IMG/VR virus record: IMGVR_UViG_3300044796_000657
Coordinates: 62,001-126,000 of that record
DNA: 64,000 nucleotides
Direction: 5' to 3' (one strand)
Each line of letters starts with the position of its first letter. Positions within the stretch are counted from its first letter, which is position 1. The notes under the pieces are model-generated. The model ran no database searches. It worked only from the letters and a program-made list of their open reading frames with translations, and was not told the origin of the DNA. Positions 306-63,270 of this stretch are shown in pieces. A program made the translations under genes and the position numbers.

Positions 306-319
306 GGATGTATGGTCAC
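306..319 (-). promoter_or_regulatory. 14-bp element (variant GTGACCATACATCC)
   Basis: Contains the TGA stop of 316..681; ATG at +9. Confidence 0.8.
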
Positions 320-681
320 AGACCGCCCGACTTCTTGAGAACACGCCCGTTAACGGCATTGCCAATTTTTTGCTGTGAAACTTTGATTTTAGGCAGTTTG
401 CGTTTACCAGCCCACTTCAGCATTGTAGGCGTCAAGATAATCGTTGCGTTTGGATCTTTTGAACCAATCGTAATGATACTAGCGTAGAAGCTCACCCTTG
501 CCTCAGTGTTGGCCAATCGCATGATCTTCTCAATGATTGCTGTGGTTTCGGCTTCATTGAGTTTGGGGAATGTATCACCACGCTGAAATGCCGGAATCAA
601 ATCAATGATTCCTTGTCTTGTCGCAACAGCTTGAGCAGCCCTAGCAGGATCGCTCAAGTCGTTTAGTTCTGGGAATGGCAT
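316..681 (-). CDS. Hypothetical protein
   Basis: ORF; AGGAG SD before ATG 681 (MPFPEL). Confidence 0.65.
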   Translation of the reverse strand: MPFPELNDLSDPARAAQAVATRQGIIDLIPAFQRGDTFPKLNEAETTAIIEKIMRLANTEARVSFYASIITIGSKDPNATIILTPTMLKWAGKRKLPKIKVSQQKIGNAVNGRVLKKSGGL

Positions 682-915
682 GTTAACTCTCCTTTTGAAC
701 ATTCTCAAACAAAGTACGGAGAACCATAGAGACTTCGCTGTTTTCGCAATCGTTAGCAATGTCGTCAAATCCAAGTTGTAGATCAGGCTCATCGTATTGG
801 TATGCAAAATTGAGAATTCGCATAACAGTACCGAGAGCCAACAACTAGCTTTTCAGGCGTTCATGATCAACGGTAGCAAATAACTGTTTAAGAGGCTTGC
901 GTGTACTTGTCATGA

Positions 916-1128
916 TTATCTCATACATTGGAAGGGAACGGCAGTGACGTTGATGCTGATGTCATCTGATTTGATGGGGCAAATGACATCACTTGCGATT
1001 TTTTTGGCATGGTCTGCATTCTGAATGCCTTGGACGCCAGAGTTAAGGTAAAACGTAGGCACTTGATGCGTCAAATCGCCTTTTGCTGTGTGATGAACAA
1101 CAGTGGCATCAATGGCATATAGTAGCAT
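916..1128 (-). CDS. Hypothetical protein
   Basis: ORF; GGGAG SD before ATG 1128. Confidence 0.6.
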   Translation of the reverse strand: MLLYAIDATVVHHTAKGDLTHQVPTFYLNSGVQGIQNADHAKKIASDVICPIKSDDISINVTAVPFQCMR

Positions 1129-1151
1129 GACGTTCTCCCTTATAACCATGT

Positions 1152-1165
1152 GGGTGTATGGTCAC
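1152..1165 (-). promoter_or_regulatory. 14-bp element GTGACCATACACCC
   Basis: Exact copy; T/A at +8/+9. Confidence 0.85.
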
Positions 1166-1513
1166 TCATATCATGGGATCAAAGGCAAGGAAAGTGTTAA
1201 ACTTAGGCCATTGTAAATGAGTTGCTAAGTCTTTGTTTTTATTGGCCCACTTGGTATTACAAGCGTAACAAGCCATAACAGTGTTAGGTCGTTCTATAAA
1301 AAGTTCTATATCATCAAATAGAACCCAAACACCATCAAGTGCCCCACCCTTACTAACAGGTCGTATATGTTCAACTGTTGCCATATAATCAGGAAATTGT
1401 ATCCCTTGAGGCTGCGGTTGCGGCAACTCCGTTAAACCAAAACACCAGAAGCATGTTCCCATTTGCTTGAAGAACAAATTATCCAATACCTCTCGCTTTC
1501 TCTTGCTTCCCAC
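1166..1513 (-). CDS. HNH endonuclease-like protein
   Basis: CFWC ... TVEHIRPVSKGG ... NTVMACYACN. Confidence 0.8.
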   Translation of the reverse strand: MGSKRKREVLDNLFFKQMGTCFWCFGLTELPQPQPQGIQFPDYMATVEHIRPVSKGGALDGVWVLFDDIELFIERPNTVMACYACNTKWANKNKDLATHLQWPKFNTFLAFDPMI

Positions 1514-1522
1514 GACAGTTTC

Positions 1523-1645
1523 CTATTTTAATTCAACATCAATTTTACATGATGTTAAGGTTACCACGGAATGGTATTCGGCTTTGACTCGTATTTGCTT
1601 GTGCTGACATCCTGCAAGCAACAAGATAAGCATCCATGCTTTCAT
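1523..1645 (-). CDS. Small putative lipoprotein (40 aa, not in the ORF track)
   Basis: MKAWMLILLLAGCQHKQ...: basic N-terminus, hydrophobic stretch, LAGC lipobox; fills the gap between neighbouring genes. Confidence 0.6.
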   Translation of the reverse strand: MKAWMLILLLAGCQHKQIRVKAEYHSVVTLTSCKIDVELK

Positions 1646-1657
1646 TTGAACCTTTCG

Positions 1658-1927
1658 TTAGTTGATGCCAAGTGCGTGATAATTGGCCCGCACATCGGCC
1701 ATATGGTTTCGGTAAATGTTTGTGTGATTCGGCAACACGCTGACCAGATCATTACGGTGAACTTGAAACAGTTGGGGATACTGCCGAGGGTTGATACCGT
1801 ATTTCACCTTAACCTCTTCAACAGTGAGGTATCCCGGCGATGGCATCCAAGCAGTCTTGCAAACAACCTCCAGAATGATCGCTTCACGACTTCCGGGTTC
1901 AGGAATTTGGCTGAATGCTGCTGCCAT
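1658..1927 (-). CDS. Hypothetical protein
   Basis: ORF with GAGGGG SD, downstream of a 14-bp element. Confidence 0.6.
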   Translation of the reverse strand: MAAAFSQIPEPGSREAIILEVVCKTAWMPSPGYLTVEEVKVKYGINPRQYPQLFQVHRNDLVSVLPNHTNIYRNHMADVRANYHALGIN

Positions 1928-1954: not shown

Positions 1955-1968
1955 GGGTGTATGGTCAC
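1955..1968 (-). promoter_or_regulatory. 14-bp element
   Basis: Exact copy; T/A at +8/+9. Confidence 0.85.
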
Positions 1969-2767: not shown

Positions 2768-2781
2768 GGGTGTATGGTCAC
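2768..2781 (-). promoter_or_regulatory. 14-bp element
   Basis: Exact copy; ATG at +9. Confidence 0.85.
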
Positions 2782-2952
2782 CAATTATCGGGCGGCCCAT
2801 GACATGACGGGCAAAGCGTTCGGCGTGACCACTGGCCAGCAACGCACTTGTATTCATTGCCAACATACCCACATTCATGTGTGAATTTGTTGAAAACGAA
2901 ACCGTTTTGGGTCAAGATTGCTGCTTTGAGAGCGTTCATGTTAACCTCAGAG

Positions 2953-3024
2953 TGGGCCGACCCGGATTCGAACCGAGAACCAAGACATTATGAGTATCCT
3001 GCTCTACCGTTGAGCTATCGGCCC
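2953..3024 (-). tRNA. tRNA with CAU anticodon, most likely tRNA-Ile2 (lysidine type); CCA not encoded
   Basis: GGGCCGA-TAGCTCAACGGTAGAGCA-GGATA-CTCATAA-TGTCT-TGGTT-CTCGGTTCGAATCCGGG-TCGGCCC-A. G1-C72 pair and no GGG/CCC anticodon stem argue against initiator; C4-G69/C5-G68 as in Ile2. Confidence 0.9.
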
Positions 3025-4303: not shown

Positions 4304-4317
4304 GGGTGTATGGTCAC
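4304..4317 (-). promoter_or_regulatory. 14-bp element
   Basis: Exact copy; T/G at +8/+9. Confidence 0.85.
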
Positions 4318-5095: not shown

Positions 5096-5109
5096 GGGTG
5101 TATGGTCAC
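5096..5109 (-). promoter_or_regulatory. 14-bp element
   Basis: Exact copy; contains stop of 5106..5741. Confidence 0.85.
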
Positions 5110-5749: not shown

Positions 5750-5763
5750 GGGTGTATGGTCAC
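5750..5763 (-). promoter_or_regulatory. 14-bp element
   Basis: Exact copy; contains stop of 5760..6086; ATG at +9. Confidence 0.85.
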
Positions 5764-6128: not shown

Positions 6129-6142
6129 GGGTGTATGGTCAC
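6129..6142 (-). promoter_or_regulatory. 14-bp element
   Basis: Exact copy. Confidence 0.85.
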
Positions 6143-7097: not shown

Positions 7098-7111
7098 GGG
7101 TGTATGGTCAC
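7098..7111 (-). promoter_or_regulatory. 14-bp element
   Basis: Exact copy; contains stop of the GNAT gene. Confidence 0.85.
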
Positions 7112-8585: not shown

Positions 8586-8599
8586 GGGTGTATGGTCAC
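8586..8599 (-). promoter_or_regulatory. 14-bp element
   Basis: Exact copy; contains stop of 8596..9222. Confidence 0.85.
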
Positions 8600-9247: not shown

Positions 9248-9261
9248 GGGTGTATGGTCAC
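9248..9261 (-). promoter_or_regulatory. 14-bp element
   Basis: Exact copy; overlaps a 20-bp palindrome at 9230-9249. Confidence 0.85.
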
Positions 9262-9520: not shown

Positions 9521-9534
9521 GGGTGTATGGTCAC
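9521..9534 (-). promoter_or_regulatory. 14-bp element
   Basis: Exact copy; contains stop of the CCA-enzyme gene. Confidence 0.85.
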
Positions 9535-10241: not shown

Positions 10242-10255
10242 GGATGTATGGTCAC
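10242..10255 (-). promoter_or_regulatory. 14-bp element (variant GTGACCATACATCC)
   Basis: One mismatch; C/A at +8/+9. Confidence 0.8.
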
Positions 10256-12952: not shown

Positions 12953-13615
12953 TTACACATAGCACGGTGTATGGTCACTCGTACGGTTTGAGGCGTCACC
13001 AATTAATCTTTCTGGATAAAGGAAATGGCATGCAATGGGGCATTTGACATCTTCATCGGCTTTTCCTGTGTAAAGAACTAAAGCACTCGTCGGAATTGTG
13101 GGAGGAACAATCTTCTTTTTGTCCATCTTCCTTGCTATTGACCACGCTTCAAAAGCAACCACTTCCGCATCGGGATTCCGTTTTTCTTTATCCCACCACG
13201 CCTTAAAGAAAAGGATATTTTGTGCGTGTGCGGTTAACGCATTAGAAGTATCATGACACCATCCATGCAAGCCACGATCTTTCTGTTGTGGCGCATACGC
13301 CGTGACATAACGACCTTTCATCAAGCTAATGATTTCTTTCTTTCGCAATGGCGTTGAAGGCTTGCTGTGTTTTTTGGGCATTTTTCCTTTGATACACTCA
13401 CGAATGCTCATAACATCCGTAACAACAGTGATCCATTTTTCATTGGTGCTTTTCAAGGCATTAATAACTGCCCAATATTCTGCTGCTACGGAATCATTAT
13501 TGATTTCAGAGAAATGCAAACCATAATCATAAGTGCCATTAGATGCGCACCATGCCCATCCATAGAAATCACGGGTTGCGCTTCCGTCTGCGTAGATAAT
13601 CATAATGACACTCAA
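12953..13615 (-). CDS. RNase H-like protein
   Basis: IYADGS, AAEYWAVINAL, VVTD, HD: acidic catalytic pattern. Confidence 0.7.
   Translation of the reverse strand: MSVIMIIYADGSATRDFYGWAWCASNGTYDYGLHFSEINNDSVAAEYWAVINALKSTNEKWITVVTDVMSIRECIKGKMPKKHSKPSTPLRKKEIISLMKGRYVTAYAPQQKDRGLHGWCHDTSNALTAHAQNILFFKAWWDKEKRNPDAEVVAFEAWSIARKMDKKKIVPPTIPTSALVLYTGKADEDVKCPIACHFLYPERLIGDASNRTSDHTPCYV
12965..12978 (-). promoter_or_regulatory. 14-bp element (variant ...CACCG)
   Basis: One mismatch; T/G at +8/+9. Confidence 0.8.
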
Positions 13616-14136: not shown

Positions 14137-14691
14137 TTATGTGGGTGTATGGTCACGCTTGGGCATAATATCCCAATCCACACTCAACCATTCCCCCGCT
14201 TGAATGAACGTTTCTCCTCGTTCTTTAATAGTGCGATAGGTGTCTGCTAACGCAAGAGCCATGCGATCCGGACGACCAATTTCAGAAGTGGGAACTGCCC
14301 TGCTAATCGTTCCAGTCTTACTGCCAAAGGTAGTGACGATAGCACTCTCTGTATGTCGTGGAGCAACCTTGCTGTGGCCGTGGTTGGGAGTAGCAAGATA
14401 CGGACAAACCTTTGCCGCATATGTTGCACATTCAAGGTGCATTGGCCCATCAACGAAACGCCGATGCTTCATACACTTCGGCCCACCAATGAAGGCGAAC
14501 GGAGGCATCATTCTTTGACCGCAAAGATGGCAAAGGTTTTTATTTAACGCTTCTGTTCGGTGAGCTTGATGGACAACCTTGAAGTCTGGTATTTTGTCTT
14601 CCCCAACGAAGACTGTGTAGTGAACCACATATCCCCTGTAGAGAGGGAATTTTTTCATACGTTCGGGAATAGGAATGGCAGAAATTTCCAT
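14137..14691 (-). CDS. Hypothetical Cys/His-rich protein
   Basis: CHLCG, FIGGP, PMHLECA, CPYL. Confidence 0.7.
   Translation of the reverse strand: MEISAIPIPERMKKFPLYRGYVVHYTVFVGEDKIPDFKVVHQAHRTEALNKNLCHLCGQRMMPPFAFIGGPKCMKHRRFVDGPMHLECATYAAKVCPYLATPNHGHSKVAPRHTESAIVTTFGSKTGTISRAVPTSEIGRPDRMALALADTYRTIKERGETFIQAGEWLSVDWDIMPKRDHTPT
14143..14156 (-). promoter_or_regulatory. 14-bp element
   Basis: Exact copy inside the 3' end of 14137..14691. Confidence 0.85.
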
Positions 14692-15643: not shown

Positions 15644-15657
15644 GGGTGTATGGTCAC
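15644..15657 (-). promoter_or_regulatory. 14-bp element
   Basis: Exact copy; contains stop of 15654..15866. Confidence 0.85.
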
Positions 15658-16469: not shown

Positions 16470-16483
16470 GGGTGTATGGTCAC
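16470..16483 (-). promoter_or_regulatory. 14-bp element
   Basis: Exact copy. Confidence 0.85.
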
Positions 16484-18146: not shown

Positions 18147-18160
18147 GGGTGTATGGTCAC
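18147..18160 (-). promoter_or_regulatory. 14-bp element
   Basis: Exact copy; contains stop of 18157..18435. Confidence 0.85.
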
Positions 18161-19291: not shown

Positions 19292-19305
19292 GGGTGTATG
19301 GTCAC
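19292..19305 (-). promoter_or_regulatory. 14-bp element
   Basis: Exact copy. Confidence 0.85.
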
Positions 19306-20192: not shown

Positions 20193-20206
20193 GGGTGTAT
20201 GGTCAC
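20193..20206 (-). promoter_or_regulatory. 14-bp element
   Basis: Exact copy; contains stop of 20203..20451. Confidence 0.85.
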
Positions 20207-21268: not shown

Positions 21269-21282
21269 TGGTGTATGGTCAC
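21269..21282 (-). promoter_or_regulatory. 14-bp element (variant ...CACCA)
   Basis: One mismatch; contains stop of 21279..21662. Confidence 0.8.
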
Positions 21283-21698: not shown

Positions 21699-21712
21699 GG
21701 GTGTATGGTCAC
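21699..21712 (-). promoter_or_regulatory. 14-bp element
   Basis: Exact copy. Confidence 0.85.
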
Positions 21713-25941: not shown

Positions 25942-25955
25942 GGGTGTATGGTCAC
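25942..25955 (-). promoter_or_regulatory. 14-bp element
   Basis: Exact copy; contains stop of 25952..26425. Confidence 0.85.
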
Positions 25956-27265: not shown

Positions 27266-27279
27266 GGGTGTATGGTCAC
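27266..27279 (-). promoter_or_regulatory. 14-bp element
   Basis: Exact copy; contains stop of 27276..27767. Confidence 0.85.
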
Positions 27280-28429: not shown

Positions 28430-28443
28430 GGGTGTATGGTCAC
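28430..28443 (-). promoter_or_regulatory. 14-bp element
   Basis: Exact copy. Confidence 0.85.
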
Positions 28444-29624: not shown

Positions 29625-30404
29625 TCATTTGCCATGATGGGGAAAATAGGTTCTAGCAGCTTCTGTTTGATTATGAGCTGGCATCAAGGTTTCAAGAATT
29701 TCCACAATGTTGATAGGTCGATACCAAACATCCCAACCACAATCAAACGCACAAAAGATGCCGGGCAACTCACCGTGACTGTGACCATACAAGTTAATGC
29801 TGCGTGGTGGCTTCCCGCCTTCGATTGCTTGTCGATTGTGCTGTGACTTATTCCAAACCCTCATACTGTAATGAGTACACGTTAAGAGACTGCCTTTATA
29901 GACGATAGGGATTTTATGCTGATCGCAGAGCTTCCCTGACAACTGCAACTCAAATCCCATAGGGTGAATACCTTCAATGTATTCAGTCTCGCTCACCTCA
30001 TGGCACCGAGGGCATTTCTTTTCAAATGCCTCATTCTTATCAACGTGAAGGCAATTCAAGCATTGTTTTTGCCAGCGAAACAATTTCCAAACCGGTTGAT
30101 TACGAACTAATACGCCATCTCTTTTAACGAATATCCTATCGTGATTGCCACCAACCCAAATGATGTGTTTACAGTTAATGTTGTTCAAGTATTCTTGGAC
30201 TTTGGCAACATAAGCGAATTCATCATCCAATTCACCGGGCAAACCCAAATCGCCATTGTAGATGAACAAATCATCCGGTTTGACGTATTCGTTTGTGACT
30301 TCATAGATGTGTTTATTCATTGCGGCAGCATCGACATAAGGGCGTTTGCTGTACCGGATAACGTTGTTGTGATCAAGATGATAATCAGAACTATGCCAAA
30401 TCAT
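29625..30404 (-). CDS. Calcineurin-like metallophosphoesterase with Zn-ribbon insert
   Basis: SDYH, GDLG, GNHD, THY, GHSH; CLNC...CPRC insert; start MIWHSS after GAGG SD. Confidence 0.85.
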   Translation of the reverse strand: MIWHSSDYHLDHNNVIRYSKRPYVDAAAMNKHIYEVTNEYVKPDDLFIYNGDLGLPGELDDEFAYVAKVQEYLNNINCKHIIWVGGNHDRIFVKRDGVLVRNQPVWKLFRWQKQCLNCLHVDKNEAFEKKCPRCHEVSETEYIEGIHPMGFELQLSGKLCDQHKIPIVYKGSLLTCTHYSMRVWNKSQHNRQAIEGGKPPRSINLYGHSHGELPGIFCAFDCGWDVWYRPINIVEILETLMPAHNQTEAARTYFPHHGK

Positions 30405-32665: not shown

Positions 32666-32679
32666 GGGTGTATGGTCAC
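32666..32679 (-). promoter_or_regulatory. 14-bp element
   Basis: Exact copy. Confidence 0.85.
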
Positions 32680-35610: not shown

Positions 35611-35624
35611 GGGTGTATGGTCAC
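35611..35624 (-). promoter_or_regulatory. 14-bp element at the strand switch
   Basis: Exact copy; T/G at +8/+9. Confidence 0.85.
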
Positions 35625-49116: not shown

Positions 49117-49131
49117 ATCTTATCAAAGTAA

Positions 49132-50433: not shown

Positions 50434-50814
50434 CAACCGCCGTAATTATAATTATCGCCATCATCTTCATAGATCTCGATCTCAATCTCGCCAAGTCTCT
50501 TTCCGCAGCTAGAGAAATTGGTCATTGTTCGACAATTTGGCTTGGGGGGTGGCGATGTTAACGAAACAGTATTTACATTTTGACTCAAATTGTCATTGCA
50601 CTCAATCTCATCAATGGCAACTTGCACTCTTATAGGTCTTGGATCGAAATTTAGAGGATTTGGATCGAAATAGCGAAAATGGACGTTATTTACATCCGCA
50701 TCGTCGTAGTAACCAATATAATGGTCAAGACACGACGGACATATCCAACGCCCATAAAATTGGCCGAGACGATAAGCAGGTTCGTTGCATAAATCGCAAT
50801 TCACGACTACTCCT

Positions 50815-51477: not shown

Positions 51478-51478
51478 G

Positions 51479-54086: not shown

Positions 54087-54451
54087 AAAAGCCCCATAGT
54101 GCGGGCCTCCGCTCGTATGGAGTCCCTCAGTGATTTCTTGGACTTTAGTATAAACAAACTGTCGGCAATACTCAAGGTCACAACATTGACCGTCGCAACA
54201 CCATCTGCGACCGCTCGACTAACAGTATGGTTGCCGTCAATTAAGTAATGACACACAACCTTATCAATTGGCAAAGACGCAAAGATTACGACTTTTAGCA
54301 AATCGGCGTGCAGCACGTGTACGGGATCGATATAGATCAAAGGTAACAGCCAATCCAAAGACGGAGCTTTTTTCTCCGGTTCGTATTTAGCAGCCTTTTT
54401 CTTCGCCTCCGTGATATTAAACTTCAAATGTAGGAAAGTAAAAAATTCCAT
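54083..54451 (-). CDS. ParB/Srx-like domain protein (tentative)
   Basis: YLIDGNHTVSRA; GGAGG SD. Confidence 0.45.
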   Translation of the reverse strand: MEFFTFLHLKFNITEAKKKAAKYEPEKKAPSLDWLLPLIYIDPVHVLHADLLKVVIFASLPIDKVVCHYLIDGNHTVSRAVADGVATVNVVTLSIADSLFILKSKKSLRDSIRAEARTMGLL

Positions 54452-54470
54452 AGACACCTCCGATTTACGA

Positions 54471-54484
54471 GGGTGTATGGTCAC
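54471..54484 (-). promoter_or_regulatory. 14-bp element
   Basis: Exact copy; pyrimidine-purine step shifted by 1 nt. Confidence 0.8.
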
Positions 54485-54787
54485 ACGATTGACAGAATGA
54501 TTTTTCACTTTATCACTCGGCCTTTTTAGACTTAAGATTAGTAGGCACACGATCTCCAAAAATGCCTACCGAATCTTCAATGGATTGCCCCTCCTTGAAA
54601 CGATCCCATATGATTTTTGCCGATGCTTCATCAGTCAAAATTTCTTGGTATTGAACCCCATCTTCCAACTTAAGTTTGATACGCTCGCCCACCAACCAGC
54701 GAATACGACGAGTCCAAGTGCGACCATTCGTACAATCAGCACGCTTGGCGGTTTTGCGGTTATCCCAAGATTTAATTAGTGAGAAGC

Positions 54788-55525
54788 TCATGCCTGAGAG
54801 GGTGTATGGTCACTCAATGCTTGAAGCCAATGGATAAGCCTTTTGGCACCATGTAGGTCTTTTGAATTGTGTTTAACTAATACTGCCGACATATCAAAAT
54901 GACAGTTGCGATGAAAAAGTCGGCCATCTACAACATAGAAGCGGTCACGGGCGAAATTTGGATCACGCCACTTGCTAAGTTTTTCGCCCTCTTGATGTTG
55001 GCCGAATAAGCCAAACCGCTCATCCACTCGCTCTTCAACTCGTTGCCAAAAATAAGTTCTAAAACCATCAGGCATTGGCATTTCAACACATTGATTGATG
55101 TTAACACTTCGCTCTTTATTGTAATCTGGTTTCGCACTGTCAATTGTCTTACAAAGCAATAAAAACTTGGAAACAGCAGGCTCTACCAATTCCATACGAA
55201 GTCGCTGCTTTTCATCTTCTTTCATCCCAATATATTTACGAAGACTAACATCAGGCCGTGTTTCCTTAATGACTGATGCCTTGCCAAAAAAACCACCGCC
55301 ACCCTTAACGATACTACGTCCAGCTTGTGGCTTATCCCACTCGTCCACAATGGGCCTAAACTCTTTGTGAAACTTCTCAAACGAAACTTTACGAATTTTG
55401 CCATTTTCATCAACCAAATCCAATTTTTTTGCTTTCAATCCATGTTCGGAGCCAATGTAAAGCCACAAAGAGTTGTCAGTTGTGCGATGCATGGTCTGAG
55501 GAACGTAAAGCATAAAAGCCTCCAT
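54788..55525 (-). CDS. Hypothetical protein
   Basis: 245-aa ORF. Confidence 0.65.
   Translation of the reverse strand: MEAFMLYVPQTMHRTTDNSLWLYIGSEHGLKAKKLDLVDENGKIRKVSFEKFHKEFRPIVDEWDKPQAGRSIVKGGGGFFGKASVIKETRPDVSLRKYIGMKEDEKQRLRMELVEPAVSKFLLLCKTIDSAKPDYNKERSVNINQCVEMPMPDGFRTYFWQRVEERVDERFGLFGQHQEGEKLSKWRDPNFARDRFYVVDGRLFHRNCHFDMSAVLVKHNSKDLHGAKRLIHWLQALSDHTPSQA
54800..54813 (-). promoter_or_regulatory. 14-bp element
   Basis: Exact copy; ATG of 54513..54791 at +9. Confidence 0.85.
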
Positions 55526-55533
55526 TTTCCATC

Positions 55534-55562
55534 AGTATAACATTTTATCGCACTAAAGTCAA
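55534..55562 (-). promoter_or_regulatory. sigma70-like promoter
   Basis: TTGACT-17-TATACT. Confidence 0.65.
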
Positions 55563-56163
55563 GTAAAAAGCGTCAATCAACACGATAAACCTTGTTCCGC
55601 CTACTCAAACTGGCCAAGACCTGAAATTTGTCTTCGTAAAGAATAGAGTTAACTTCTTCTGCTTCAAACAAAGCGGTGCCATTAATGGCATTCATCAATT
55701 CTTTGCCTTTTGCGATACTCTCTATTGCCGTATCTTTGAACCAGTAGTAATGGTTATCGGTATTTGTGCTGCGATAAAACTTCGTACTTGGAGCAGGCAA
55801 ATAAGAGTTATACCATCGCATAACTTCGTTGATTTTATTCAAGTTGAATTTAAGATTTTTCAATCCTTTGCTATTAGGATATTGTTGAATACCCCAAGCA
55901 AAAGTCAACAAACCTTCACTCTCATAACGACCACCATAAACGAATCTATAATAACTCATTTGAACGCAATCCTTTCACCAAAGGGCGTTGATGCCGCCGC
56001 TTGAATTCTTCGATGCCAATCGTTTTGAGATACAACCCACTGCGTTCGCTGTGAATTTTAAAGATTCTTCGTTTTTTTGGAGTTTGACACGGTTCTCCGG
56101 GCTTCGCCTGACACCGGGAACATATCGTTGAGTTTTTAGCATCAGTGCTTGCCCATCCAGTTA

Positions 56164-57114
56164 TCATTTAGCGGCTATCCTTTTTTCGTCCAAGTAAAGA
56201 TGTTCTGGTCTAACACATAGATCGTTATCACAGGTGTGTAATACTCGCTTACCTTCCGGAATATCACCATAAGCCAATCCGTACGCTACTCTGTGCGCCA
56301 ACTTTGGCGAATGATCTACACTGAAATGGCCGAACCCATTATGATTGTACGCCGTCCATTCCCAACACTCGCCGCTCTTGTCAACCTTCTTCCAGAATCT
56401 CTCATCAATCGATTCCTTCGAACGATTCGGTAATCTCTCAATCTTTTCTGGTGGATGATATTCGGCATCATACCAACTGTGATTGTAAACCACCGCATGG
56501 ATCGTCTGGCGGCTTGTATTGTATTGCTTTGCCATTTCACCAATGTTAACAGGCCCGGCTACAACCGCTGCTCTAATAGCATCAACATCCGGCTTTGTTA
56601 ACTTCGCATTCACCAAACCTAAGTCGGCACGTTCCAAAGCAATAAGGTGTTCTGGATTGTGGCATTCTTCATTCTTGCAACTTCTCGTCACTTCTTGCGA
56701 TTTTCTGAGAGGGGATTTGAAGAGTTCATAAATTCCACGAACCAACAATCTCATACCTGTTGGCAGAGATAGAGACTTCGGCTTTTCCCCTTGCCAAACC
56801 CAACAATCATCTACGACCTTGACACAGGATTGAATCCGTGCTTTCAGGTCTTCAACAGGAACAGTTGATTTGAGTGAGTTGGCCAAACGGAGGTGTTCGG
56901 ATTTAATACAAAGGGGATTTTGACAGGTGCGTGTGATGTGGGCACCCTTTGGAATATTTCCGTGTGTTAATTCATAAGCGACACGATGGGCAATGAGTCT
57001 CCCACCCGCCATTTGGAAAACGCCGTATAATGGCTTGGGGTTAAGTGTCCCTTTCCAAATCAAACAATCGCCTTCTACTGCTGCATTAGCCCAAAATTCT
57101 TCTTGGTTTATCAT
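56164..57114 (-). CDS. HNH homing-endonuclease-like protein with three HNH units and an HTH
   Basis: CLIWKG/CWVWQG/CWEWTA; AHRVAY twice; C.N..C...HL three times. Confidence 0.85.
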   Translation of the reverse strand: MINQEEFWANAAVEGDCLIWKGTLNPKPLYGVFQMAGGRLIAHRVAYELTHGNIPKGAHITRTCQNPLCIKSEHLRLANSLKSTVPVEDLKARIQSCVKVVDDCWVWQGEKPKSLSLPTGMRLLVRGIYELFKSPLRKSQEVTRSCKNEECHNPEHLIALERADLGLVNAKLTKPDVDAIRAAVVAGPVNIGEMAKQYNTSRQTIHAVVYNHSWYDAEYHPPEKIERLPNRSKESIDERFWKKVDKSGECWEWTAYNHNGFGHFSVDHSPKLAHRVAYGLAYGDIPEGKRVLHTCDNDLCVRPEHLYLDEKRIAAK

Positions 57115-57339
57115 AGGATTTTCTTAAGTAAAAAATGTTTCATCAGTATAATGTTCTTTTTTGTATATTCAAGTACAGGTTATCGAGTTTGCGATTTCAA
57201 AGTCGCCATTGCAACCTGATACAATTCTTTGCCCAATCTTCGTTCTAGGCTTTGACGAATATCTTGTGGCAGTTTAGGATTACGAAGTTGTTCTAAGATC
57301 AAATCCAAGCGATCATTTTTTAACATGTTAATCCCCAAT

Positions 57340-57367
57340 AAACAAAACCGGCCCGAAGGCCGGTCTT
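57340..57367 (-). terminator. Intrinsic terminator with UUCG tetraloop
   Basis: AAGACCGGCC-TTCG-GGCCGGTTTTGTTT. Confidence 0.85.
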
Positions 57368-57370
57368 AAC

Positions 57371-57718
57371 TCACGAAAGTGTAGCAAGGATTTCTTTGAC
57401 TGTCTGCTCACCGTATTTTTCTGTCCACTGTTTATACTGCTTGACCATATTGACAATTTCAATTGCCACTTCCGCAGTATTAACCACTGGCGGCTTTTCT
57501 GCACGCCCAAGGTATTGCCGATTTTTGAATGGTCTGGTTGTTCCTATGATCTTAGCACGGCCTGAAGATATGTAATTTTTAGGAACAGAGTGCCCGAATT
57601 GGTCTTGAATGTACCTCTGAATGTCTTCGGTACTTCTAAGTCCGGTATTACAAGCGGCCTTAATAGACGCAAATGTATTGAACTTCTTGACCGTTTCAAC
57701 TTTAACTTCTTCCATCAT
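57371..57718 (-). CDS. Small putative DNA-binding protein; resembles 8172..8546
   Basis: STEDIQRYIQDQFGHSVPKNYISSGR; GGAGG SD. Confidence 0.55.
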   Translation of the reverse strand: MMEEVKVETVKKFNTFASIKAACNTGLRSTEDIQRYIQDQFGHSVPKNYISSGRAKIIGTTRPFKNRQYLGRAEKPPVVNTAEVAIEIVNMVKQYKQWTEKYGEQTVKEILATLS

Positions 57719-58421
57719 GACATTCCTCCTCCAGAGTAGTGTTATTAGAACCAACGCCCAATTTGCCTGCTCGAAATTTCCATGCCATCATTTTAGATGT
57801 ATCTTGATAAATTTTTGGCAATCCAATTTTGGCATCAGGAAACATCATTTGAAACATGGTTTTGTAAGTAGCAATTAACTCGTTTTTCGCCATCCTCAAA
57901 TTTCGACTATATGTTTTTGGATATGAGGATTCCATCCAAGATTTAAGGTTTGAATAATCAGCGAATCCACGGGGGATACAATAAAACGTGAAACTCAAAA
58001 AGGCATTTTCAGCTAATCGGGGCCGTAAATGTCCAAAAAGCCAAGAGAAAAGATCGCCGTTAATGTTGCCGCATAGATCGGCATTGAGCAAATCTACCGG
58101 TGGCTCTTCATCCGTCAAAACGACAGAACTCAATTCGCCATAGATACACTTAACCAAATCTTTATTGATACACTTTTGACGCACTAGACTATTTTTGACT
58201 TTAATCATTTTGTCAAAATTTGGCCCGTTTCGTTCAACAAATTTCAAAAGAGTTTGATTGCCAATCACCAACTTTTCCAACGCTTTCTTTACACACACAC
58301 CATCGCTACTTGGTAAAAAAATAGCATGTTTGGCTTCTTGCTTAATGTTGAAAGTCCAATTTCTTATTTCGTCTTTTGCCGGTCTTTTTTGAGCACACCA
58401 AGGATTATTAATACCCTTCAT
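57702..58421 (-). CDS. Hypothetical protein, possibly methyltransferase fold
   Basis: FVERN, VDLLNADLCG; weak. Confidence 0.45.
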   Translation of the reverse strand: MKGINNPWCAQKRPAKDEIRNWTFNIKQEAKHAIFLPSSDGVCVKKALEKLVIGNQTLLKFVERNGPNFDKMIKVKNSLVRQKCINKDLVKCIYGELSSVVLTDEEPPVDLLNADLCGNINGDLFSWLFGHLRPRLAENAFLSFTFYCIPRGFADYSNLKSWMESSYPKTYSRNLRMAKNELIATYKTMFQMMFPDAKIGLPKIYQDTSKMMAWKFRAGKLGVGSNNTTLEEECHDGRS

Positions 58422-59566
58422 TTCTCAGCCTCGAAGTAAAATTCATTTACTGATTATACTTCCAGTCAAGCGATTATCAAGGTTTTATAAAATGAGTCAT
58501 TTTGAAACTAAAAATACGTCAATGGGATCGAAAGTCCTAGTCAGCCAAAAATTCATCCACGCTATTGCACGTTTGTCCCCACCGAAAATTAATATGGGTA
58601 TCCAAGCCAATAACACGAACATGCCAATCGTAGCAAGCCACAAAAGAACCAACACAATTCCAAAACAATACCTAAGCCATTTTTTCATCTATGGTACACC
58701 CATTACTTTCTTTTGAACACACATACAAAACCTAGAAACACATAATGCCCATCTATCAACGTAAGGCTCACCTGTAATTAATTGCATTATCCAACACGGC
58801 CCTAAGACCATTATAGCAACCAAAATAGTCACTATGGCCAAATGGAACAAAAACAAGCATACCAATGCATATCTGATACTTTGCCACACTTTACTGATTT
58901 TCATCTGGTTCTTCTCCAAGTGATTGTAGGAAGCACTCCCACCCATGAGACCATTTTCTATCTCTTGCATGTCCGAAAAATTTTTCTATAACGATTAGAA
59001 AAAACCACGGTGGCAACCATAACAACAAAATAACCAAAGCGACAGGAAACATCACTACATGTCGCATCGCAGTCCAAATCTTAATGTTCATTTCTTTGGC
59101 TCAATCTCCAACTTTGTATACAAAAAGTTATTGGTGTTATCCGCACTGAGATAAGTGCATTGGATAATGAAGGGCTGTTTGACTTTCATCCAAATTTCCA
59201 CACTATCTCCATAAGTGCTGCCGAAACGACTGCTACTCTTAACAACTTTCACTTCTAATATCGTGACGAGTTCATAATCATCGCACGTTTTGAAATCCCA
59301 TTTTTGGCCCCACTTGGCATTCAATTTCAGACAAGTAATACCATCAGGCTTTAATTTGACGATTTGTTTATGATTTTTCTCTGTCACTAAATTGGTAATT
59401 AACTCTTTGTCGTTTTGGTTTTGAACACAACTGTAGACGCCGCAAGTAAGAGAGAACATAAGGATAAGAGAGAACAGAACCCACAAAATGGTTTTCATGA
59501 CATTTTTCCTGTATTGTTTAGTAATTGTACAACAACAAACAACACAGATCAATACTAATTAATTAT

Positions 59567-60776: not shown

Positions 60777-60802
60777 ATCGTCACCTTATAAAAATAAAAA
60801 AA

Positions 60803-61099
60803 TTATTTCCTAATAAGAAAACCATCGGCAATAGTTGTTTCGGGTACGCAAATCCATGTCCGCAATTTAGGATTAATCGACATTCGATGTATAGCAATTG
60901 CGGCAATTAAATATGATTTCCCGCTACCAGTAGGAAGGTTATTGATTCGAAATGGCTTATCGTGTTGATGAAGCCACCCTTCCGTCTGTCCTTGTCGTAG
61001 AAGATCATAACCATTAGCTTTTTGATCGGGTAATGCTGACTTCAGGAGGTTCCAACCTAGTTTTGCAGCAGTGGAAATGTTAAAGTTTTTATTGTTCAT
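60803..61099 (-). pseudogene. Truncated SF2 helicase (N-terminal part only)
   Basis: LRQGQ, LPTGSGKS, WICVP, then stop. Confidence 0.6.
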
Positions 61100-61917
61100 C
61101 TACAAAGTATAACAATTAATTTTATGAATTCAATTTCGTTAACTTGGATTTTCTTTTCAAAACTCGCAGCGTTCTACCGCCTTCAATTGTTAATTTCCCA
61201 TTCGCTCTAATAAGACCGAACGAAACAAGCAGATCAAAATTAGGGCCACTCTTAACCCTCTTTTCGACAACCGACGAACCTGCCTTTTTGAGCAAGGCAA
61301 ATTGACCTGCCGTTAAAATCACTTCACCATTTCTTATTTTTTGACGAATGTTGCTCATTTGATCTCCTTTGCCAAGACGTAATACCACCTGTCCGGTTCC
61401 ACATAATCCAACATCCACAAGTGCCCACCGATATTAACTGTGCGGTGTGGCCTTTCAACTATCTCGCCACTGCTCAATGCCCATCCACCTTCACAAACAG
61501 CCGCATAAATGACAATTTGGCTAATATCCCCCAATTTCATTGTAGGTGCTGACAGATTTCGTTCTATGGAAGCACGAATACAAGATAATCCCGTCTTGTA
61601 TTGGATGAGCGTGATTTCGCTTTTTGTAATACCGATGACAATGTAATACATGCGGTTGCGAGAACGGCTACTATAGCCCTTGCCATTGGTGAATTCATCT
61701 GCCGCCATTTCAATAGCGGTGTTAATTTTCAAGCCTTCCGGCAGAATATAGAACATTCCGGGCGTATTGGCTTGTGTCCAAAACTTGCGATCCATACCAC
61801 CGGCTGAATTTTGATTCGGGGTGATGGTTGCTACCCAATTGTTACCATTCTGGGTAAGCAAAGGTACCTTAGTCATCGCACCATCTTCAAGTGGTATCTT
61901 AACTATAGGGCGTTCCA

Positions 61918-62535
61918 TTATTTACCTCTCAAATGGCTTAACTTATCAGCAATTTGATTACCGCCACGGGGAATCCATTTCACACGTTCACCAAACTTGG
62001 TAGAAGCAAACTGATTGTCAGTATAAATTTCATCATTGTATTCAGGCGAAGGATATTGATCCAATGCAAACTGAATACCCAATTCTTCCGCTTCTTGTGA
62101 ACTTTCGCACGCAACGTTTCGCACAAACACATCCATATCACCGTTTACCCATTTGTGAATTACGGCAATACGTGCTTTCCCCAATTTCCAACCCGCATCA
62201 ACAAAGATCCCTGCCGAAATAATAGTCTGTTTATCAGTTAAGAGTGGTTCAACCTCAACCGACAGATTTTCAATGGCACGAATGATTTTTGCCGCACCTT
62301 CATCGGTTTGTCTGTAGTTGTAACGAAGAAGTTCGTCAAGGAGAGTTCTTGTTGAAATTATCCTTGCTGACCGCCAGCCGGTGGGCATAAATTTGATTTC
62401 GCCATCTTTGTTAACCCAAACGTTATGCTTGCCACCGGCGTGCGGAATCTGCATGTGATACGAAGTATGTACTTCAACGCTATAACCATGAGCGGTAAGA
62501 AGGTCAACAACGTAATTGGCATTTATCCGGTTCAT
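61918..62535 (-). CDS. Protein with C-terminal RNase H-like domain (probably leaderless)
   Basis: IFVDAG, SQEAE..GI..AL, IYTDNQ, WIPRGGNQIADKLS. Confidence 0.8.
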   Translation of the reverse strand: MNRINANYVVDLLTAHGYSVEVHTSYHMQIPHAGGKHNVWVNKDGEIKFMPTGWRSARIISTRTLLDELLRYNYRQTDEGAAKIIRAIENLSVEVEPLLTDKQTIISAGIFVDAGWKLGKARIAVIHKWVNGDMDVFVRNVACESSQEAEELGIQFALDQYPSPEYNDEIYTDNQFASTKFGERVKWIPRGGNQIADKLSHLRGK

Positions 62536-62543
62536 GTTATGTG

Positions 62544-62557
62544 GGGTGTATGGTCAC
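62544..62557 (-). promoter_or_regulatory. 14-bp element
   Basis: Exact copy; ATG at +9. Confidence 0.85.
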
Positions 62558-62837
62558 AGTTCCCTACATTTCATCAGATTTGATAATCTTAATTTCATAC
62601 TGTCCTAGCTTATCTTCGTCCATGTATGATAAGGCTAAGTAGCAATCAGCACGGGTTTTGAAACATGCCAAAGGCATATCTTCTGCCGCTTTGCCACTGA
62701 CTATGTCATAACAGGGAATGACACCACTGCCCCAATTAATGTCCGTGTAGTAAGCACGATAGCCATCATCCTTTACAAGATCGGCATGACGAAGTTCAAT
62801 GGCATAACGCATAAGTTTGCTCCTTAATTAAACTTAT

Positions 62838-62851
62838 GGGTGTATGGTCAC
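62838..62851 (-). promoter_or_regulatory. 14-bp element
   Basis: Exact copy. Confidence 0.85.
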
Positions 62852-63256
62852 AGGTGAGGCTTCATGATATTCTATCCACAAGGATGTAAGATAATTGGAT
62901 TAGCCAAACGATAGGCAAAACTTGTGTGAGGAAATCCCGTTTTTCGCATGAGTTTTGGCAATTGAACTTTATGACGAACCAAAGTACCAACTCTGAACAT
63001 TTCAAATAACGCAGCATTGGCTAAGTTCGAAATGACATCATTGGTTTTTGTTGTTCTCATCGTTCCCTTAAATTTCAAATGAAACTCATAATGAAAAACT
63101 TTTGATGAATTGGCAATTTCACCATTTTCATGTAACCATTTTACAATCCAATCATGCATTTCTTGCTTTTTAGCTTTTGCATATGCAGTTAACATTTTCA
63201 TTCCTGTAAAGGTGTGAGACGAATGGGATCATCCATGTTAACCTCTTGTTGAAGTG

Positions 63257-63270
63257 AGGGGTATGGTCAC
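63257..63270 (-). promoter_or_regulatory. Degenerate element (GTGACCATACCCCT)
   Basis: First 10 nt exact; contains stop of 63267..63488. Confidence 0.65.

What the first reader, a model, noticed from the sequence alone, without database searches (positions are those of the whole stretch)
306..63270. 32 co-oriented copies of GTGACCATACACCC with a fixed pyrimidine-purine step 8/9 nt downstream: candidate new single-block phage promoter system
Seen: 32 copies counted by eye (27 exact). Plus-strand starts: 306, 1152, 1955, 2768, 4304, 5096, 5750, 6129, 7098, 8586, 9248, 9521, 10242, 12965, 14143, 15644, 16470, 18147, 19292, 20193, 21269, 21699, 25942, 27266, 28430, 32666, 35611, 54471, 54800, 62544, 62838, 63257. 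All read on the minus (coding) strand, at or near gene junctions and upstream of a start codon. The following spacer varies, but in 30 of 32 copies nt 8 is C/T and nt 9 is A/G (exceptions 54471, 63257); chance would give roughly one in four. Established: transcription typically starts at a purine preceded by a pyrimidine. Inference: the element occupies -22..-9 of a promoter with no visible -35 box. It matches no sigma70, sigma54, T4-late or T7 consensus I recognise, which implies a phage-encoded RNA polymerase, sigma factor or activator. No such gene was recognised in this window.
Basis: partly seen in the sequence, partly recalled or inferred. Interest (0 to 1): 0.92.

Follow-up and report, generated by a model that had tools for sequence, protein, structure and literature searches.

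The report
Conserved promoter-like motif of a megaphage
A 14-base sequence repeated 32 times in front of genes in this window is most likely the promoter of a second, phage-controlled wave of transcription in a 614-kb uncultivated megaphage; it is kept letter for letter in distant relatives, but no transcript data exist yet and the protein that reads it is not identified.

Summary
There are 32 copies of GTGACCATACACCC (27 exact), all on the minus strand, against 0.39 expected. A pyrimidine-purine step sits at +8/+9 in 30 of 32.

The window is bases 62,001-126,000 of an IMG/VR contig cut from a 614,480-bp JGI megaphage contig. In the 177 kb of that contig analysed, the 11-base core GTGACCATACA occurs 103 times.

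Of these, 61 copies lie 20-42 nt upstream of a ribosome-binding-site-led start codon, or exactly 9 nt upstream of an ATG that has no ribosome-binding site. Six genes are of the second kind. That points to an mRNA 5' end at +9.

Four relatives with 46-57% protein identity and 32-52% GC carry the same motif before an orthologous RuvB-like gene. One also carries it before a tRNA gene.

Host-type TTGACA/TATAAT promoters are a separate class interleaved in the same region. No phage RNA polymerase turned up in about 213 kb inspected. Two phage sigma-factor genes did, one of them 18 kb beyond the window.

Best reading, confidence 0.6: a phage-specific promoter, probably read by host core polymerase with a phage sigma. 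Rivals: stoperator-like repressor sites or an RNA-level site. Arrays of the bare core in both orientations around a helicase gene remain unexplained. This is a new member of a known kind.

The parts
306..319 (-). motif copy (ATCC variant); putative start 297
   Evidence: Y-R ok; ATG exactly at +9 opens a 288-aa Zn-ribbon ORF, no SD, no alternative start
1152..1165 (-). motif copy, exact
   Evidence: Y-R ok; SD-led ATG at +24
1955..1968 (-). motif copy, exact
   Evidence: Y-R ok; SD-led ATG at +28
2768..2781 (-). motif copy, exact; putative start 2759
   Evidence: ATG at +9 opens a 103-aa ORF, which is also the start chosen by the JGI and Logan gene calls
4304..4317 (-). motif copy, exact
   Evidence: Y-R ok; SD-led ATG at +35
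5096..5109 (-). motif copy, exact
   Evidence: Y-R ok; SD-led ATG at +23
5750..5763 (-). motif copy, exact; putative start 5741
   Evidence: ATG at +9 opens a 211-aa ORF, which is the public gene call
6129..6142 (-). motif copy, exact
   Evidence: Y-R ok; ATG at +43 (JGI call, weak SD)
7098..7111 (-). motif copy, exact
   Evidence: Y-R ok; SD-led ATG at +27
8586..8599 (-). motif copy, exact
   Evidence: Y-R ok; start codon ambiguous (ATG at +4, +7 or +40; the two public calls differ)
9248..9261 (-). motif copy, exact
   Evidence: Y-R ok; SD-led ATG at +26, 208-aa gene
9521..9534 (-). motif copy, exact
   Evidence: Y-R ok; SD-led ATG at +28
10242..10255 (-). motif copy (ATCC variant)
   Evidence: Y-R ok; JGI start at +16 of the PolyA_pol/CCA-adding family gene
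12965..12978 (-). motif copy (CCG variant)
   Evidence: Y-R ok; SD-led ATG at +66
14143..14156 (-). motif copy, exact
   Evidence: Y-R ok; SD-led ATG at +35
15644..15657 (-). motif copy, exact
   Evidence: Y-R ok; SD-led ATG at +36
16470..16483 (-). motif copy, exact
   Evidence: Y-R ok; SD-led ATG at +27
18147..18160 (-). motif copy, exact
   Evidence: Y-R ok; SD-led ATG at +42
19292..19305 (-). motif copy, exact
   Evidence: Y-R ok; SD-led ATG at +25
20193..20206 (-). motif copy, exact, in tandem with a host-type promoter
   Evidence: a 12/12 TTGACA-17-TATAAT match (20182-20154) lies between the motif and the gene start at +71
21269..21282 (-). motif copy (CCA variant)
   Evidence: Y-R ok; SD-led ATG at +26
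21699..21712 (-). motif copy, exact
   Evidence: Y-R ok; ATG at +37, weak SD
25942..25955 (-). motif copy, exact
   Evidence: Y-R ok; SD-led ATG at +31
27266..27279 (-). motif copy, exact
   Evidence: Y-R ok; SD-led ATG at +24
28430..28443 (-). motif copy, exact, just downstream of a host-type promoter-like site
   Evidence: TTGACT-17-TAGGCT ends 1 nt before the motif; SD-led ATG at +33
32666..32679 (-). motif copy, exact
   Evidence: Y-R ok; SD-led ATG at +25
35611..35624 (-). motif copy, exact, at the head of the minus-strand gene block (divergent junction)
   Evidence: no sigma-70-like site in the 500 nt upstream; an 11/12 host-type promoter (35591-35564) lies downstream; gene start at +84
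54471..54484 (-). motif copy, exact, without the Y-R step
   Evidence: SD starts at +10, ATG at +20
54800..54813 (-). motif copy, exact; putative start 54791
   Evidence: ATG at +9 opens a 92-aa ORF, no SD, no alternative start
62544..62557 (-). motif copy, exact; putative start 62535
   Evidence: ATG at +9 opens a 205-aa ORF, no SD, no alternative start
62838..62851 (-). motif copy, exact
   Evidence: Y-R ok; SD-led ATG at +26
63257..63270 (-). degenerate copy (2 mismatches), without the Y-R step
   Evidence: SD-led ATG at +21
29781..29794 (+). core-only copy (GTGACCATACAAGT) in reverse orientation, inside the phosphoesterase ORF 29625-30446
   Evidence: exact 11-mer core (about 0.07 exact 11-mers expected by chance in 140 kb); no gene follows it

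Best explanation
The element is the promoter of a phage-specific transcription class, 'middle' in the sense of following the host-promoter class, in a 614-kb megaphage. A sequence-specific factor docks on the invariant core GTGACCATACA plus the CC-rich positions 12-14. That places the block at about -22 to -9. RNA synthesis starts about 8-9 nt downstream, at the purine that follows a T; the weak signature A-T-n-G-K-T-R lies around the start. This gives either mRNAs with 11-34-nt leaders that begin just before the Shine-Dalgarno (SD) sequence or, for at least five or six genes, leaderless mRNAs beginning with AUG. Host-type TTGACA/TATAAT promoters in the same region form the earlier class. The most likely reader is host core RNA polymerase carrying a phage sigma factor: the 261-aa one at contig 143,989-144,774, or the 144-aa one at 195,733-196,167. 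An undetected phage RNA polymerase in the unread about 65% of the genome is the alternative. Shown here: the motif, its statistics, its position and orientation, its conservation, and the presence of the sigma genes. Inferred: transcription start, timing, and which protein reads the motif.
For: 32 of 32 copies are on the coding strand, against 0.39 expected. There are 103 cores in 177 kb. Conservation starts abruptly at G1 with nothing at -35. Y-R at +8/+9 occurs in 30/32 window copies, 71/87 copies and 57/61 gene-proximal copies. Six SD-less ATGs lie exactly at +9; five have no in-frame alternative start with an SD, and two of them are the starts chosen by public gene calls. The other starts cluster at +20 to +42, and apart from one copy (5750, GGAG at +1..+4) no SD begins before +9. 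The motif heads transcription units at strand switches (window 35611; contig 345,810). Host-type promoters occur either just upstream or just downstream of it, as expected for independent tandem promoters. In relatives with 46-57% identical RuvB-like proteins and 32-52% GC, the motif is the only block that aligns upstream of the ortholog. One relative has it 34 nt before a tRNA-Leu gene, which excludes a translation signal. Two sigma-70-family genes lie on the same contig. The 261-aa one sits in a motif-free stretch, is preceded by a host-type promoter-like site, and lies upstream in transcription order of the motif-dense region. Strong host-type promoter matches are enriched on the coding strand, 41 versus 13 with 17.8 expected, so host polymerase is used. 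Published precedents exist: conserved early-promoter blocks of jumbo phages, and the AR9 late promoter with the layout block, 6 N, T, purine(+1) (PMC7598289).
Against: There are no transcript 5' ends. With a start at +9, the block sits at -22..-9, which does not fit the usual -10 (-12..-7) and -35 geometry of a sigma with regions 2 and 4. Neither sigma could be tied to the motif: no usable homologues were found, and the Clp_N-adjacent position that holds the 261-aa sigma gene in this phage holds unrelated genes in relative L456. Arrays of the bare core at 40-54-nt spacing, in both orientations, without the start-site signature and without genes, surround a helicase gene. Four convergent pairs of copies also exist. 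These look more like protein-binding arrays than promoters. In four of five genomes a host-type promoter lies immediately upstream of the motif at the RuvB-like gene, so the motif is not needed there as the only promoter. The count of ATGs at +9 (6) is only modestly above what the column frequencies alone predict (about 3.5, my calculation).
Confidence: 0.6

Rival explanations
1. Stoperator-like or operator sites. A monomeric phage DNA-binding protein, a repressor or global regulator, binds the asymmetric core wherever it occurs and blocks or modulates host RNA polymerase in an orientation-dependent way. This would silence the roughly 175-kb accessory region, for example in a plasmid-like carrier state or late in infection.
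For: The features match what is described for Cluster A mycobacteriophage repressor sites: more than 20 copies of an asymmetric 13-14-mer, in short intergenic spaces and in promoters, with orientation tied to the direction of transcription (PMC9283540). Bare-core arrays and inverted pairs without start-site features look like binding-site clusters. The motif lies 0-23 nt downstream of the -10 of a host-type promoter at the RuvB-like gene in four genomes, and at window 28430 and contig 171,917 and 345,810. These are classical operator positions. A ParB-HTH protein is encoded nearby.
Against: It does not explain the fixed Y-R step, the weak second block, the SD-less ATGs exactly at +9, or why almost no SD (one exception, copy 5750) begins before +9. 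Some copies lie upstream of the -35 of host-type promoters, where a roadblock would be useless. No repressor, integrase or other lysogeny gene was recognised in the parts read. There is no similarity to the mycobacteriophage site.
Confidence: 0.17
2. An RNA-level or elongation-level signal inside transcripts that start at host-type promoters. Either it is a site for a sequence-specific endoribonuclease that cuts between +8 and +9 and frees each cistron, or it is a loading or pause site for an elongation factor (ops/nut-like).
For: It is strictly co-oriented with transcription, and intrinsic terminator-like hairpins are few. It lies in the leader directly after host-type promoters at several loci. 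A cut at +8/+9 would equally yield the leaderless AUGs. Partial complementarity ACCA(T)/(A)TGGT exists in some copies.
Against: Only 22 of 87 copies have the complementary TGGT. The mean folding energy of -3.7 kcal/mol is close to the controls at -2.5 to -2.7. The copies at window 35611 and 20193 lie upstream of the host-type promoter, and at 35611 there is no upstream same-strand gene, so they would not be transcribed. Reverse-strand arrays in non-coding DNA are not explained. No RNase candidate is tied to it; the only hits were RNase H-family matches in the window and a NYN-domain protein at 000657 ~153.3-153.9 kb.
Confidence: 0.1
3. The core is primarily a replication or partition element: iterons, or polar barrier sites for an initiator, helicase or ParB-like protein. 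Its presence before genes would be secondary.
For: Seven same-strand copies lie upstream of a UvrD-like helicase gene, and seven reverse copies lie downstream of it, flanking a 252-aa zinc-ribbon ORF. T4 and T7 origins are known to contain phage promoters (my knowledge, not checked here).
Against: About 60-90 dispersed single copies with a fixed relation to gene starts are not what iterons or centromeres look like. The arrays can be accommodated by the promoter reading, as an origin primed by transcription.
Confidence: 0.05

Closest known systems
Early promoters of RNA-polymerase-encoding jumbo phages and the AR9 late promoter (PMC7598289)
   Same: A short, highly conserved block can be found bioinformatically upstream of many co-oriented small early genes, with no -35. 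The AR9 late promoters have the layout block (-11..-8), 6 N, T(-1), purine(+1), which is close to block (-22..-9), 7 weakly conserved nt, T(-1), purine(+1) here.
   Different: Those blocks are about 10 nt long, AT-rich and centred near -10, and they are read by phage multisubunit polymerases. Here the block is 11-14 nt, 45-57% GC and centred near -15. No such polymerase gene was seen in the 35% of the genome read. Host-type promoters are abundant, which argues that host polymerase is used.
Promoters of T7-group single-subunit RNA polymerases
   Same: Near-perfect conservation of a long asymmetric block in dozens of copies, a sharp upstream edge, a separate weaker initiation region, a purine start, tandem arrangement with host promoters, and orphan copies near replication origins (my knowledge of T7).
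   Different: There is no similarity to the T7, T3, SP6 or K11 consensus as I recall them. The conserved part ends 9 nt before the start instead of running through it. No PF00940 polymerase was found in the parts read. The motif is identical in relatives whose proteins are only about 50% identical, whereas T7-group specificities drift faster.
Phage sigma-dependent promoter classes (T4 late/gp55, SPO1 gp28 and gp33-34, phiEco32 gp36; recalled, not checked here)
   Same: A phage sigma redirects host core polymerase to a conserved phage-only consensus. The T4 late promoter is a single block without a -35 and is conserved across very distant relatives. Here there are two phage sigma genes plus a host-type early class.
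   Different: The position of the block relative to the inferred start does not fit a -10 element. Both sigmas here have a region-4-like helix-turn-helix, yet no -35 element is conserved. The link between sigma and motif is untested.
Stoperators of Cluster A mycobacteriophages (PMC9283540)
   Same: An asymmetric 13-14-mer in more than 20 copies, in short intergenic spaces and promoters, with orientation locked to the direction of transcription.
   Different: Here there is a fixed spacing to start codons and to a Y-R step, leaderless ATGs at +9, and a second weak block. No repressor or lysogeny module was recognised, and the sequence is unrelated.

Membership tests
T7-group single-subunit RNAP promoter | A T7-like RNA polymerase gene (Pfam PF00940) in the same genome | tested here: inconclusive
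   Not found in contig 12.9-205.5 kb or in three smaller pieces, by my own Pfam scans and by precomputed Pfam on gene calls. About 400 kb of the 614-kb contig could not be read.
T7-group single-subunit RNAP promoter | A conserved block running from about -17 through the start site | tested here: not met
   Strong conservation ends 9 nt before the inferred start. Positions -8..+5 carry only 0.0-1.2 bits each.
Sigma-70-family (phage sigma) dependent promoter | A sigma-70-family gene encoded by the phage | tested here: met
   261-aa protein: Sigma70_r2 2.9e-9, r4 3.4e-5, TIGR02937 57.6 bits against a cut-off of 42.9, and PDB SigA/RpoS region 2 hits. 144-aa protein: phrog_351 4e-8, Sigma70_r2 weak.
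Sigma-70-family (phage sigma) dependent promoter | A -10-type element at about -12..-7 and, for sigmas with region 4, a -35 element 15-19 bp upstream | tested here: inconclusive
   With the start at +9, positions -12..-7 read ACCCyn and nothing is conserved at -35. If the start were at +6, then TACACC would sit at -12..-7. The start site itself is not measured.
Host sigma-70 consensus promoter | TTGACA, 16-18 nt, TATAAT | tested here: not met
   The motif contains no such pair. Genuine matches form a separate set (11 strong ones on the minus strand of window 1-40 kb; 41 versus 13 by strand in 167 kb).
Jumbo-phage vRNAP early / nvRNAP late promoters | Phage multisubunit RNAP (split beta/beta') genes | tested here: inconclusive
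   No such gene and no DxDGD-type motif in ORFs of at least 200 aa in the ~155 kb held; the two giant ORFs are repeat proteins.
Jumbo-phage vRNAP early / nvRNAP late promoters | An AT-rich block of about 10 nt centred near -10 | tested here: not met
   The block is 45% GC over the 11-mer and 57% over the 14-mer, and it is centred near -15.
Cluster A mycobacteriophage stoperators | Many copies of an asymmetric 13-14-mer, intergenic, with orientation tied to transcription | tested here: met
   The criteria are taken from PMC9283540.
Cluster A mycobacteriophage stoperators | A cognate immunity repressor and a temperate life style | tested here: inconclusive
   No repressor or integrase family was found in the parts scanned. 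Only a ParB-HTH protein was seen. Most ORFs have no family at all.
Start-associated sequences of Cluster K mycobacteriophages (recalled) | The motif lies immediately upstream of start codons and acts in translation | tested here: not met
   A separate SD follows the motif. The distance to the start varies from 9 to more than 80 nt. One copy precedes a tRNA gene.
Hairpin repeats cut by a Cas6-like RNase / CRISPR-like array | A stable conserved stem-loop, and regular repeat-spacer units | tested here: not met
   Mean MFE is -3.7 against -2.5 to -2.7 kcal/mol in controls, and TGGT is present in 22 of 87 copies. The arrays have 40-54-nt periods with a 14-20-nt repeat.

The most novel reading that the evidence does not exclude
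The 11-nt core is the docking site of one dedicated phage protein with a double use. It would define about 60-90 promoters that a minimal phage sigma (or an unknown polymerase) reads through a contiguous -22..-9 contact not described for sigma-70-family factors. As bare arrays in both orientations around a helicase gene, it would also organise an origin or a polar barrier. This would be a genome-wide 'promoter-iteron' code kept unchanged across a megaphage clade whose genomes range from 32 to 52% GC.
Probability: 0.2. Interest if true: 0.72.

Novelty: new member of a known kind. Interest (0 to 1): 0.5.

Why it matters
Almost nothing is known about how phages of 500 kb and more schedule their genes, because they are uncultivated. 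This motif gives a concrete handle that can be tested at the bench. It partitions about 175 kb of orphan genes into a host-promoter class and a phage-motif class. It predicts exact 5' ends, including a set of leaderless mRNAs. And it comes with two candidate sigma factors that can be expressed and tested with laboratory core polymerase. Its letter-perfect conservation across relatives of very different base composition makes it a marker for finding fragments of this clade in metagenomes. If it is orthogonal to host promoters, it could also supply a promoter/sigma pair as a tool.

Tried and rejected
- **No related GenBank phage.** Megablast of 20 kb and tblastn of the 1953-aa ORF against GenBank phages found no match.
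- **Motif scans of public collections.** The 14-mer and variants were scanned in IMG/VR, JGI metagenomes and GTDB genomes. Only this contig has multiple copies; the rest are singletons with no protein similarity to the phage.
- **Scan for the NADFDGD coding pattern**, intended to catch a beta' gene on this contig.
- **The search for related loci with the RuvB-like alignment** in IMG/VR returned only the contig itself.
- **Homologue searches.** The leaderless 211-aa gene is an ORFan. The 261-aa sigma returned itself plus one weak hit.
- **Giant ORFs as hidden polymerases.** The 1953-aa and 1361-aa proteins are internally repetitive and have no catalytic motifs. The 604-aa ORF has no hit.
- **The 270-aa gene** next to the motif in relative L456 is not a sigma.
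- **Search for a second conserved promoter motif.** A k-mer search found none; the only recurring 12-mer is the 5' end of a paralogous gene family.
- **RNA hairpin idea.** Support is weak.
- **Literature search** for the motif and for the sample identifiers returned only unrelated PCR primers.
- **Reading the block as -35 (GTGACC) plus a -10-like TAnnAA or GGTwA further downstream.** Rejected because the start would then fall at +17 to +20, beyond most Shine-Dalgarno sequences and beyond the ATGs at +9.

Full report
**Observation**

The pattern GTGACCATACACCC, allowing two mismatches, occurs 32 times in the window. All copies are on the minus strand and at the listed coordinates. There are 27 exact copies, against 0.39 expected from shuffles. 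Reading the flanks confirms a pyrimidine at +8 and a purine at +9 in 30 of 32 copies; the exceptions are 54471 and 63257. Base composition is even, at 39-47% GC.

**Where the window comes from**

An exact-match scan of viral contigs showed that only one contig carries many copies: IMGVR_UViG_3300044796_000657, 430,229 bp. The window equals its positions 62,001-126,000, with no mismatch over 43 kb of overlap.

A look-up by protein showed that this is part of JGI contig Ga0480561_0000004, 614,480 bp. IMG/VR cut that contig into two pieces. An identical copy exists in Logan assemblies of SRR35360338.

Gene content is typical of huge phages as described in PMC7162821:
- many small orphan ORFs;
- a CCA-adding-type enzyme, Nudix, GNAT and HNH endonucleases;
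- MetRS and an ArgRS-like protein;
- ribosome recycling factor and Thg1;
- a tmRNA and tRNA-Met;
- CsrA, peptide deformylase and ClpX-like proteins.

Nothing similar is in GenBank phages. By walking with look-ups I read contig positions 12.9-205.5 kb plus three smaller pieces. That is about 213 kb, or 35% of the contig.

**Anatomy of the element**

- The invariant part is the 11-mer GTGACCATACA.
- In 177 kb of the contig it occurs 103 times, 87 on the minus strand and 16 on the plus strand. It is densest at 30-50 kb, with 51 copies, and is absent from 137-163 kb.
- Positions 12-14 prefer CCC (46 of 103).
- Conservation begins abruptly at G1, and nothing is conserved further upstream.
- Downstream there is a weaker signature: A at +3, T at +4, G at +6, G/T at +7, T at +8, purine at +9, and A at +12/+13.
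- The Y-R step at +8/+9 is present in 71 of 87 copies, against 5-41 for the other dinucleotide steps from +1 to +16.

I separated copies that are followed within 60 nt by a Shine-Dalgarno (SD)-led start, or by an ATG at exactly +9, from all other copies.
- The first group has 61 members, and 57 of them have the Y-R step.
- The other 42 copies are arrays, inverted pairs and weak-SD cases. Only 20 of these have the step.

**Relation to genes**

- SD-led start codons cluster at +20 to +42. With one exception (copy 5750, GGAG at +1..+4) no SD starts before +9, and the earliest start at +9/+10. One public gene call starts at +16.
- Six genes start with an ATG exactly at +9 and have no convincing SD (5750 has GGAG only 4 nt upstream): window 306, 2768, 5750, 54800 and 62544, and contig 35,387. 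Five have no in-frame alternative start with an SD. In one, the N-terminal zinc-ribbon cysteines would be lost with a later start. Two of these ATGs are the starts chosen by both public gene callers.
- In about a third of the copies, a long upstream open frame ends at the TGA inside GTGACC. In ten copies the motif lies inside the 3' end of the upstream ORF. The element is therefore positioned by the downstream gene, not by the available spacer.
- Plus-strand copies at contig 4,988, 21,885 and 345,810 point at plus-strand genes.

Together these facts point to an RNA 5' end at or just before +9.

**Two promoter classes**

Near-consensus TTGACA-17-TATAAT sites, several with an extended TG, are present and are strongly biased to the coding strand.
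- There are eleven strong ones in window 1-40 kb.
- Over 167 kb there are 41 on the minus strand and 13 on the plus strand, with 17.8 expected per strand.

They mostly occupy other intergenic spaces than the motif. Where both occur together, the host-type site can lie just upstream (contig 137,050 and 171,917; window 28430) or just downstream (window 20193 and 35611; contig 46,971 and 36,702). Intrinsic-terminator-like sites are fewer than expected by chance. The picture is a host-polymerase class plus a second, motif-dependent class interleaved in long co-directional gene arrays.

**Relatives**

The RuvB-like AAA gene at contig 135,939-137,033 is preceded by the motif. It has five homologues at 45-57% identity; I fetched the contigs of four (P0001, P0002, P0004, P0005; 46-57% by BLASTP). 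All four carry the motif upstream of the ortholog:
- L450 (32% GC): the exact 14-mer.
- L451 (41% GC): two exact copies 38 nt apart.
- L457 (52.5% GC): two copies ending in AACC, 42 nt apart.
- L456 (37% GC): one copy with C5 changed to T.

In an alignment of the five upstream regions, the motif is the only conserved block. Synteny of several neighbouring genes confirms that these are relatives. In four of the five genomes a host-type promoter lies 0-23 nt upstream of the motif.

In L450 a further copy lies 34 nt before a tRNA-Leu gene. That excludes a role in translation initiation. Conservation of the full core (10-11 of 11 bases) across this range of base composition and protein divergence means a strongly constrained reader, most simply a conserved phage-encoded protein.

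**Who reads it**

No RNA polymerase subunit family appeared in any Pfam scan of the parts read. None appeared in the precomputed Pfam of the public gene calls either. The two giant ORFs are repeat proteins without catalytic motifs.

Two sigma-70-family genes were found.
- **The 261-aa sigma, contig 143,989-144,774, minus strand.** It lies 18 kb beyond the right end of the window. It has regions 1.2/2 and 4, and its nearest matches are SigA/RpoS/SigB-F-G and FliA region 2. It sits in the motif-free 137-163 kb stretch. It follows a Clp_N gene that has a host-type promoter-like site. In transcription order it lies upstream of the motif-dense region.
- **The 144-aa sigma, contig 195,733-196,167.** It has a partial region 2 and a region-4-like helix-turn-helix.

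A sigma cascade is therefore likely. Which sigma, if either, reads this motif is not shown. Homologue searches gave nothing usable, and the geometry is unusual for a sigma: the block is at -22..-9 if the start is at +9. With a start at +6, TACACC would occupy -12..-7, so the exact start matters.

**What does not fit neatly**

At contig 32.0-32.4 kb, a 450-nt non-coding stretch upstream of a UvrD-like helicase gene holds seven core copies. Four of them are in tandem at 40-52-nt spacing and mostly lack the start-site signature. Downstream of the helicase, after a GC-rich hairpin, seven core copies in the opposite orientation flank a 252-aa zinc-ribbon ORF.

Four units of about 85 bp consist of two convergent copies. 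One reverse copy lies inside a gene in the window (29781).

These could be transcription-primed origin elements, since T4 and T7 origins contain phage promoters (my knowledge). They could equally be binding arrays for a non-polymerase protein. They are the main reason I keep a stoperator-like reading at 0.17; that class is described in PMC9283540.

An RNA-structure-dependent processing site is weakly supported. Only 22 of 87 copies can form the ACCA/TGGT stem, and folding energies barely differ from controls. Some copies lie where no upstream transcript is expected.

**Verdict**

The promoter interpretation is the best explanation, at confidence 0.6, with the start at about +9. The factor is probably one of two phage sigmas acting on host core polymerase.

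This is a new consensus for an uncharacterised megaphage clade. I rate it a new member of a known kind, namely phage-specific conserved promoters (PMC7598289), and not a new kind of system. The core-only arrays and the unusual block-to-start geometry leave room for something less ordinary.

Noticed in passing
whole window (= IMGVR_UViG_3300044796_000657:62001-126000): The source is a 614,480-bp JGI contig (Ga0480561_0000004). IMG/VR split it into two 'viral regions' of 430 kb and 175 kb, leaving about 9.3 kb out between them. An identical sequence occurs in Logan assemblies of SRR35360338. I could not read what lies in the omitted segment.
   Followed up: partly
outside the window: L453:2260-3045 (+) = contig 143,989-144,774 (-); L463:9348-9782 (+) = contig 195,733-196,167 (-): Two phage sigma-70-family genes, of 261 aa and 144 aa. 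The first follows ClpX-like and Clp_N genes and is preceded by a host-type promoter-like site.
   Followed up: partly
L454:1334-1681 and L454:3839-4986 (contig about 28.7-32.4 kb): There are arrays of the bare 11-mer core. Seven copies lie upstream of a UvrD-like helicase gene on the gene strand. Seven copies in reverse orientation lie downstream of it, around a 252-aa zinc-ribbon ORF. The spacing is 40-54 nt, and a GC-rich hairpin lies between the helicase gene and the reverse copies. This may be an origin or a binding-site cluster.
   Followed up: partly
contig 32,208/32,289; 34,898/34,980; 40,269/40,354; 45,898/45,983 (L079, L129): Four paralogous units of about 85 bp, each made of two convergent motif copies. 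They share inner sequences (yATGAATAG... and ...AAAGAAACGG) and would form a long hairpin in RNA. Their function is unknown.
   Followed up: no
window 29781-29794 (+): An exact 11-mer core in reverse orientation inside the phosphoesterase ORF 29625-30446. About 0.07 exact 11-mers are expected by chance in 140 kb (the sequence held when this copy was found).
   Followed up: no
window 3248-3220, 11015-10988, 12415-12387, 13656-13628, 17072-17044, 20182-20154, 24383-24354, 30530-30502, 35591-35564 (all minus strand): Near-consensus TTGACA/TATAAT promoters, several with an extended TG, all on the coding strand. Over 167 kb there are 41 on the minus strand and 13 on the plus strand, with 17.8 expected per strand. 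The host therefore uses canonical sigma-70 promoters.
   Followed up: yes
window 2952-3024 (-): A tRNA-Met gene (ARAGORN and Rfam, 65.4 bits), about 200 nt downstream of the host-type promoter at 3248-3220. A tmRNA gene lies at L027:9016-9382 (contig 131,045-131,411).
   Followed up: partly
L041:3968-9829 (-) (contig 53,308-59,169) and L460:4870-8955 (+) (contig 177,142-181,227): Two giant orphan proteins, of 1953 aa and 1361 aa, built of internal repeats (about 100-130-aa units, and 'TTWNV' units). They have no Pfam, PHROG or PDB hit. Neither is a polymerase.
   Followed up: partly
window 36000-54400: A motif-free block with genes on both strands. It encodes glycosyltransferases (GT9, GT34), sulfotransferases, a cytidylyltransferase, methionine aminopeptidase (M24) and an amidohydrolase-like protein. 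It looks like a sugar-modification island.
   Followed up: no
contig 24,754-26,180 (L061/L454): A family of small plus-strand paralogues shares an identical 5' end (ATGAACCTCAATAAA...). This was the only other recurrent 12-mer found.
   Followed up: no
all motif copies: In 34 of 103 copies, a long upstream open frame terminates at the TGA contained in GTGACC, so the stop codon of one gene lies inside the putative promoter of the next. The identical 14-mers at nearly every junction could also serve as microhomology for gene shuffling.
   Followed up: partly
L458:2575-2802, L458:1-985, L458:2907-3524 (contig about 147-157 kb): The phage encodes a CsrA homologue, a serpin and a NYN-domain ribonuclease. 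PRPP synthetase, FolD and purE/SAICAR synthetase genes are nearby.
   Followed up: no
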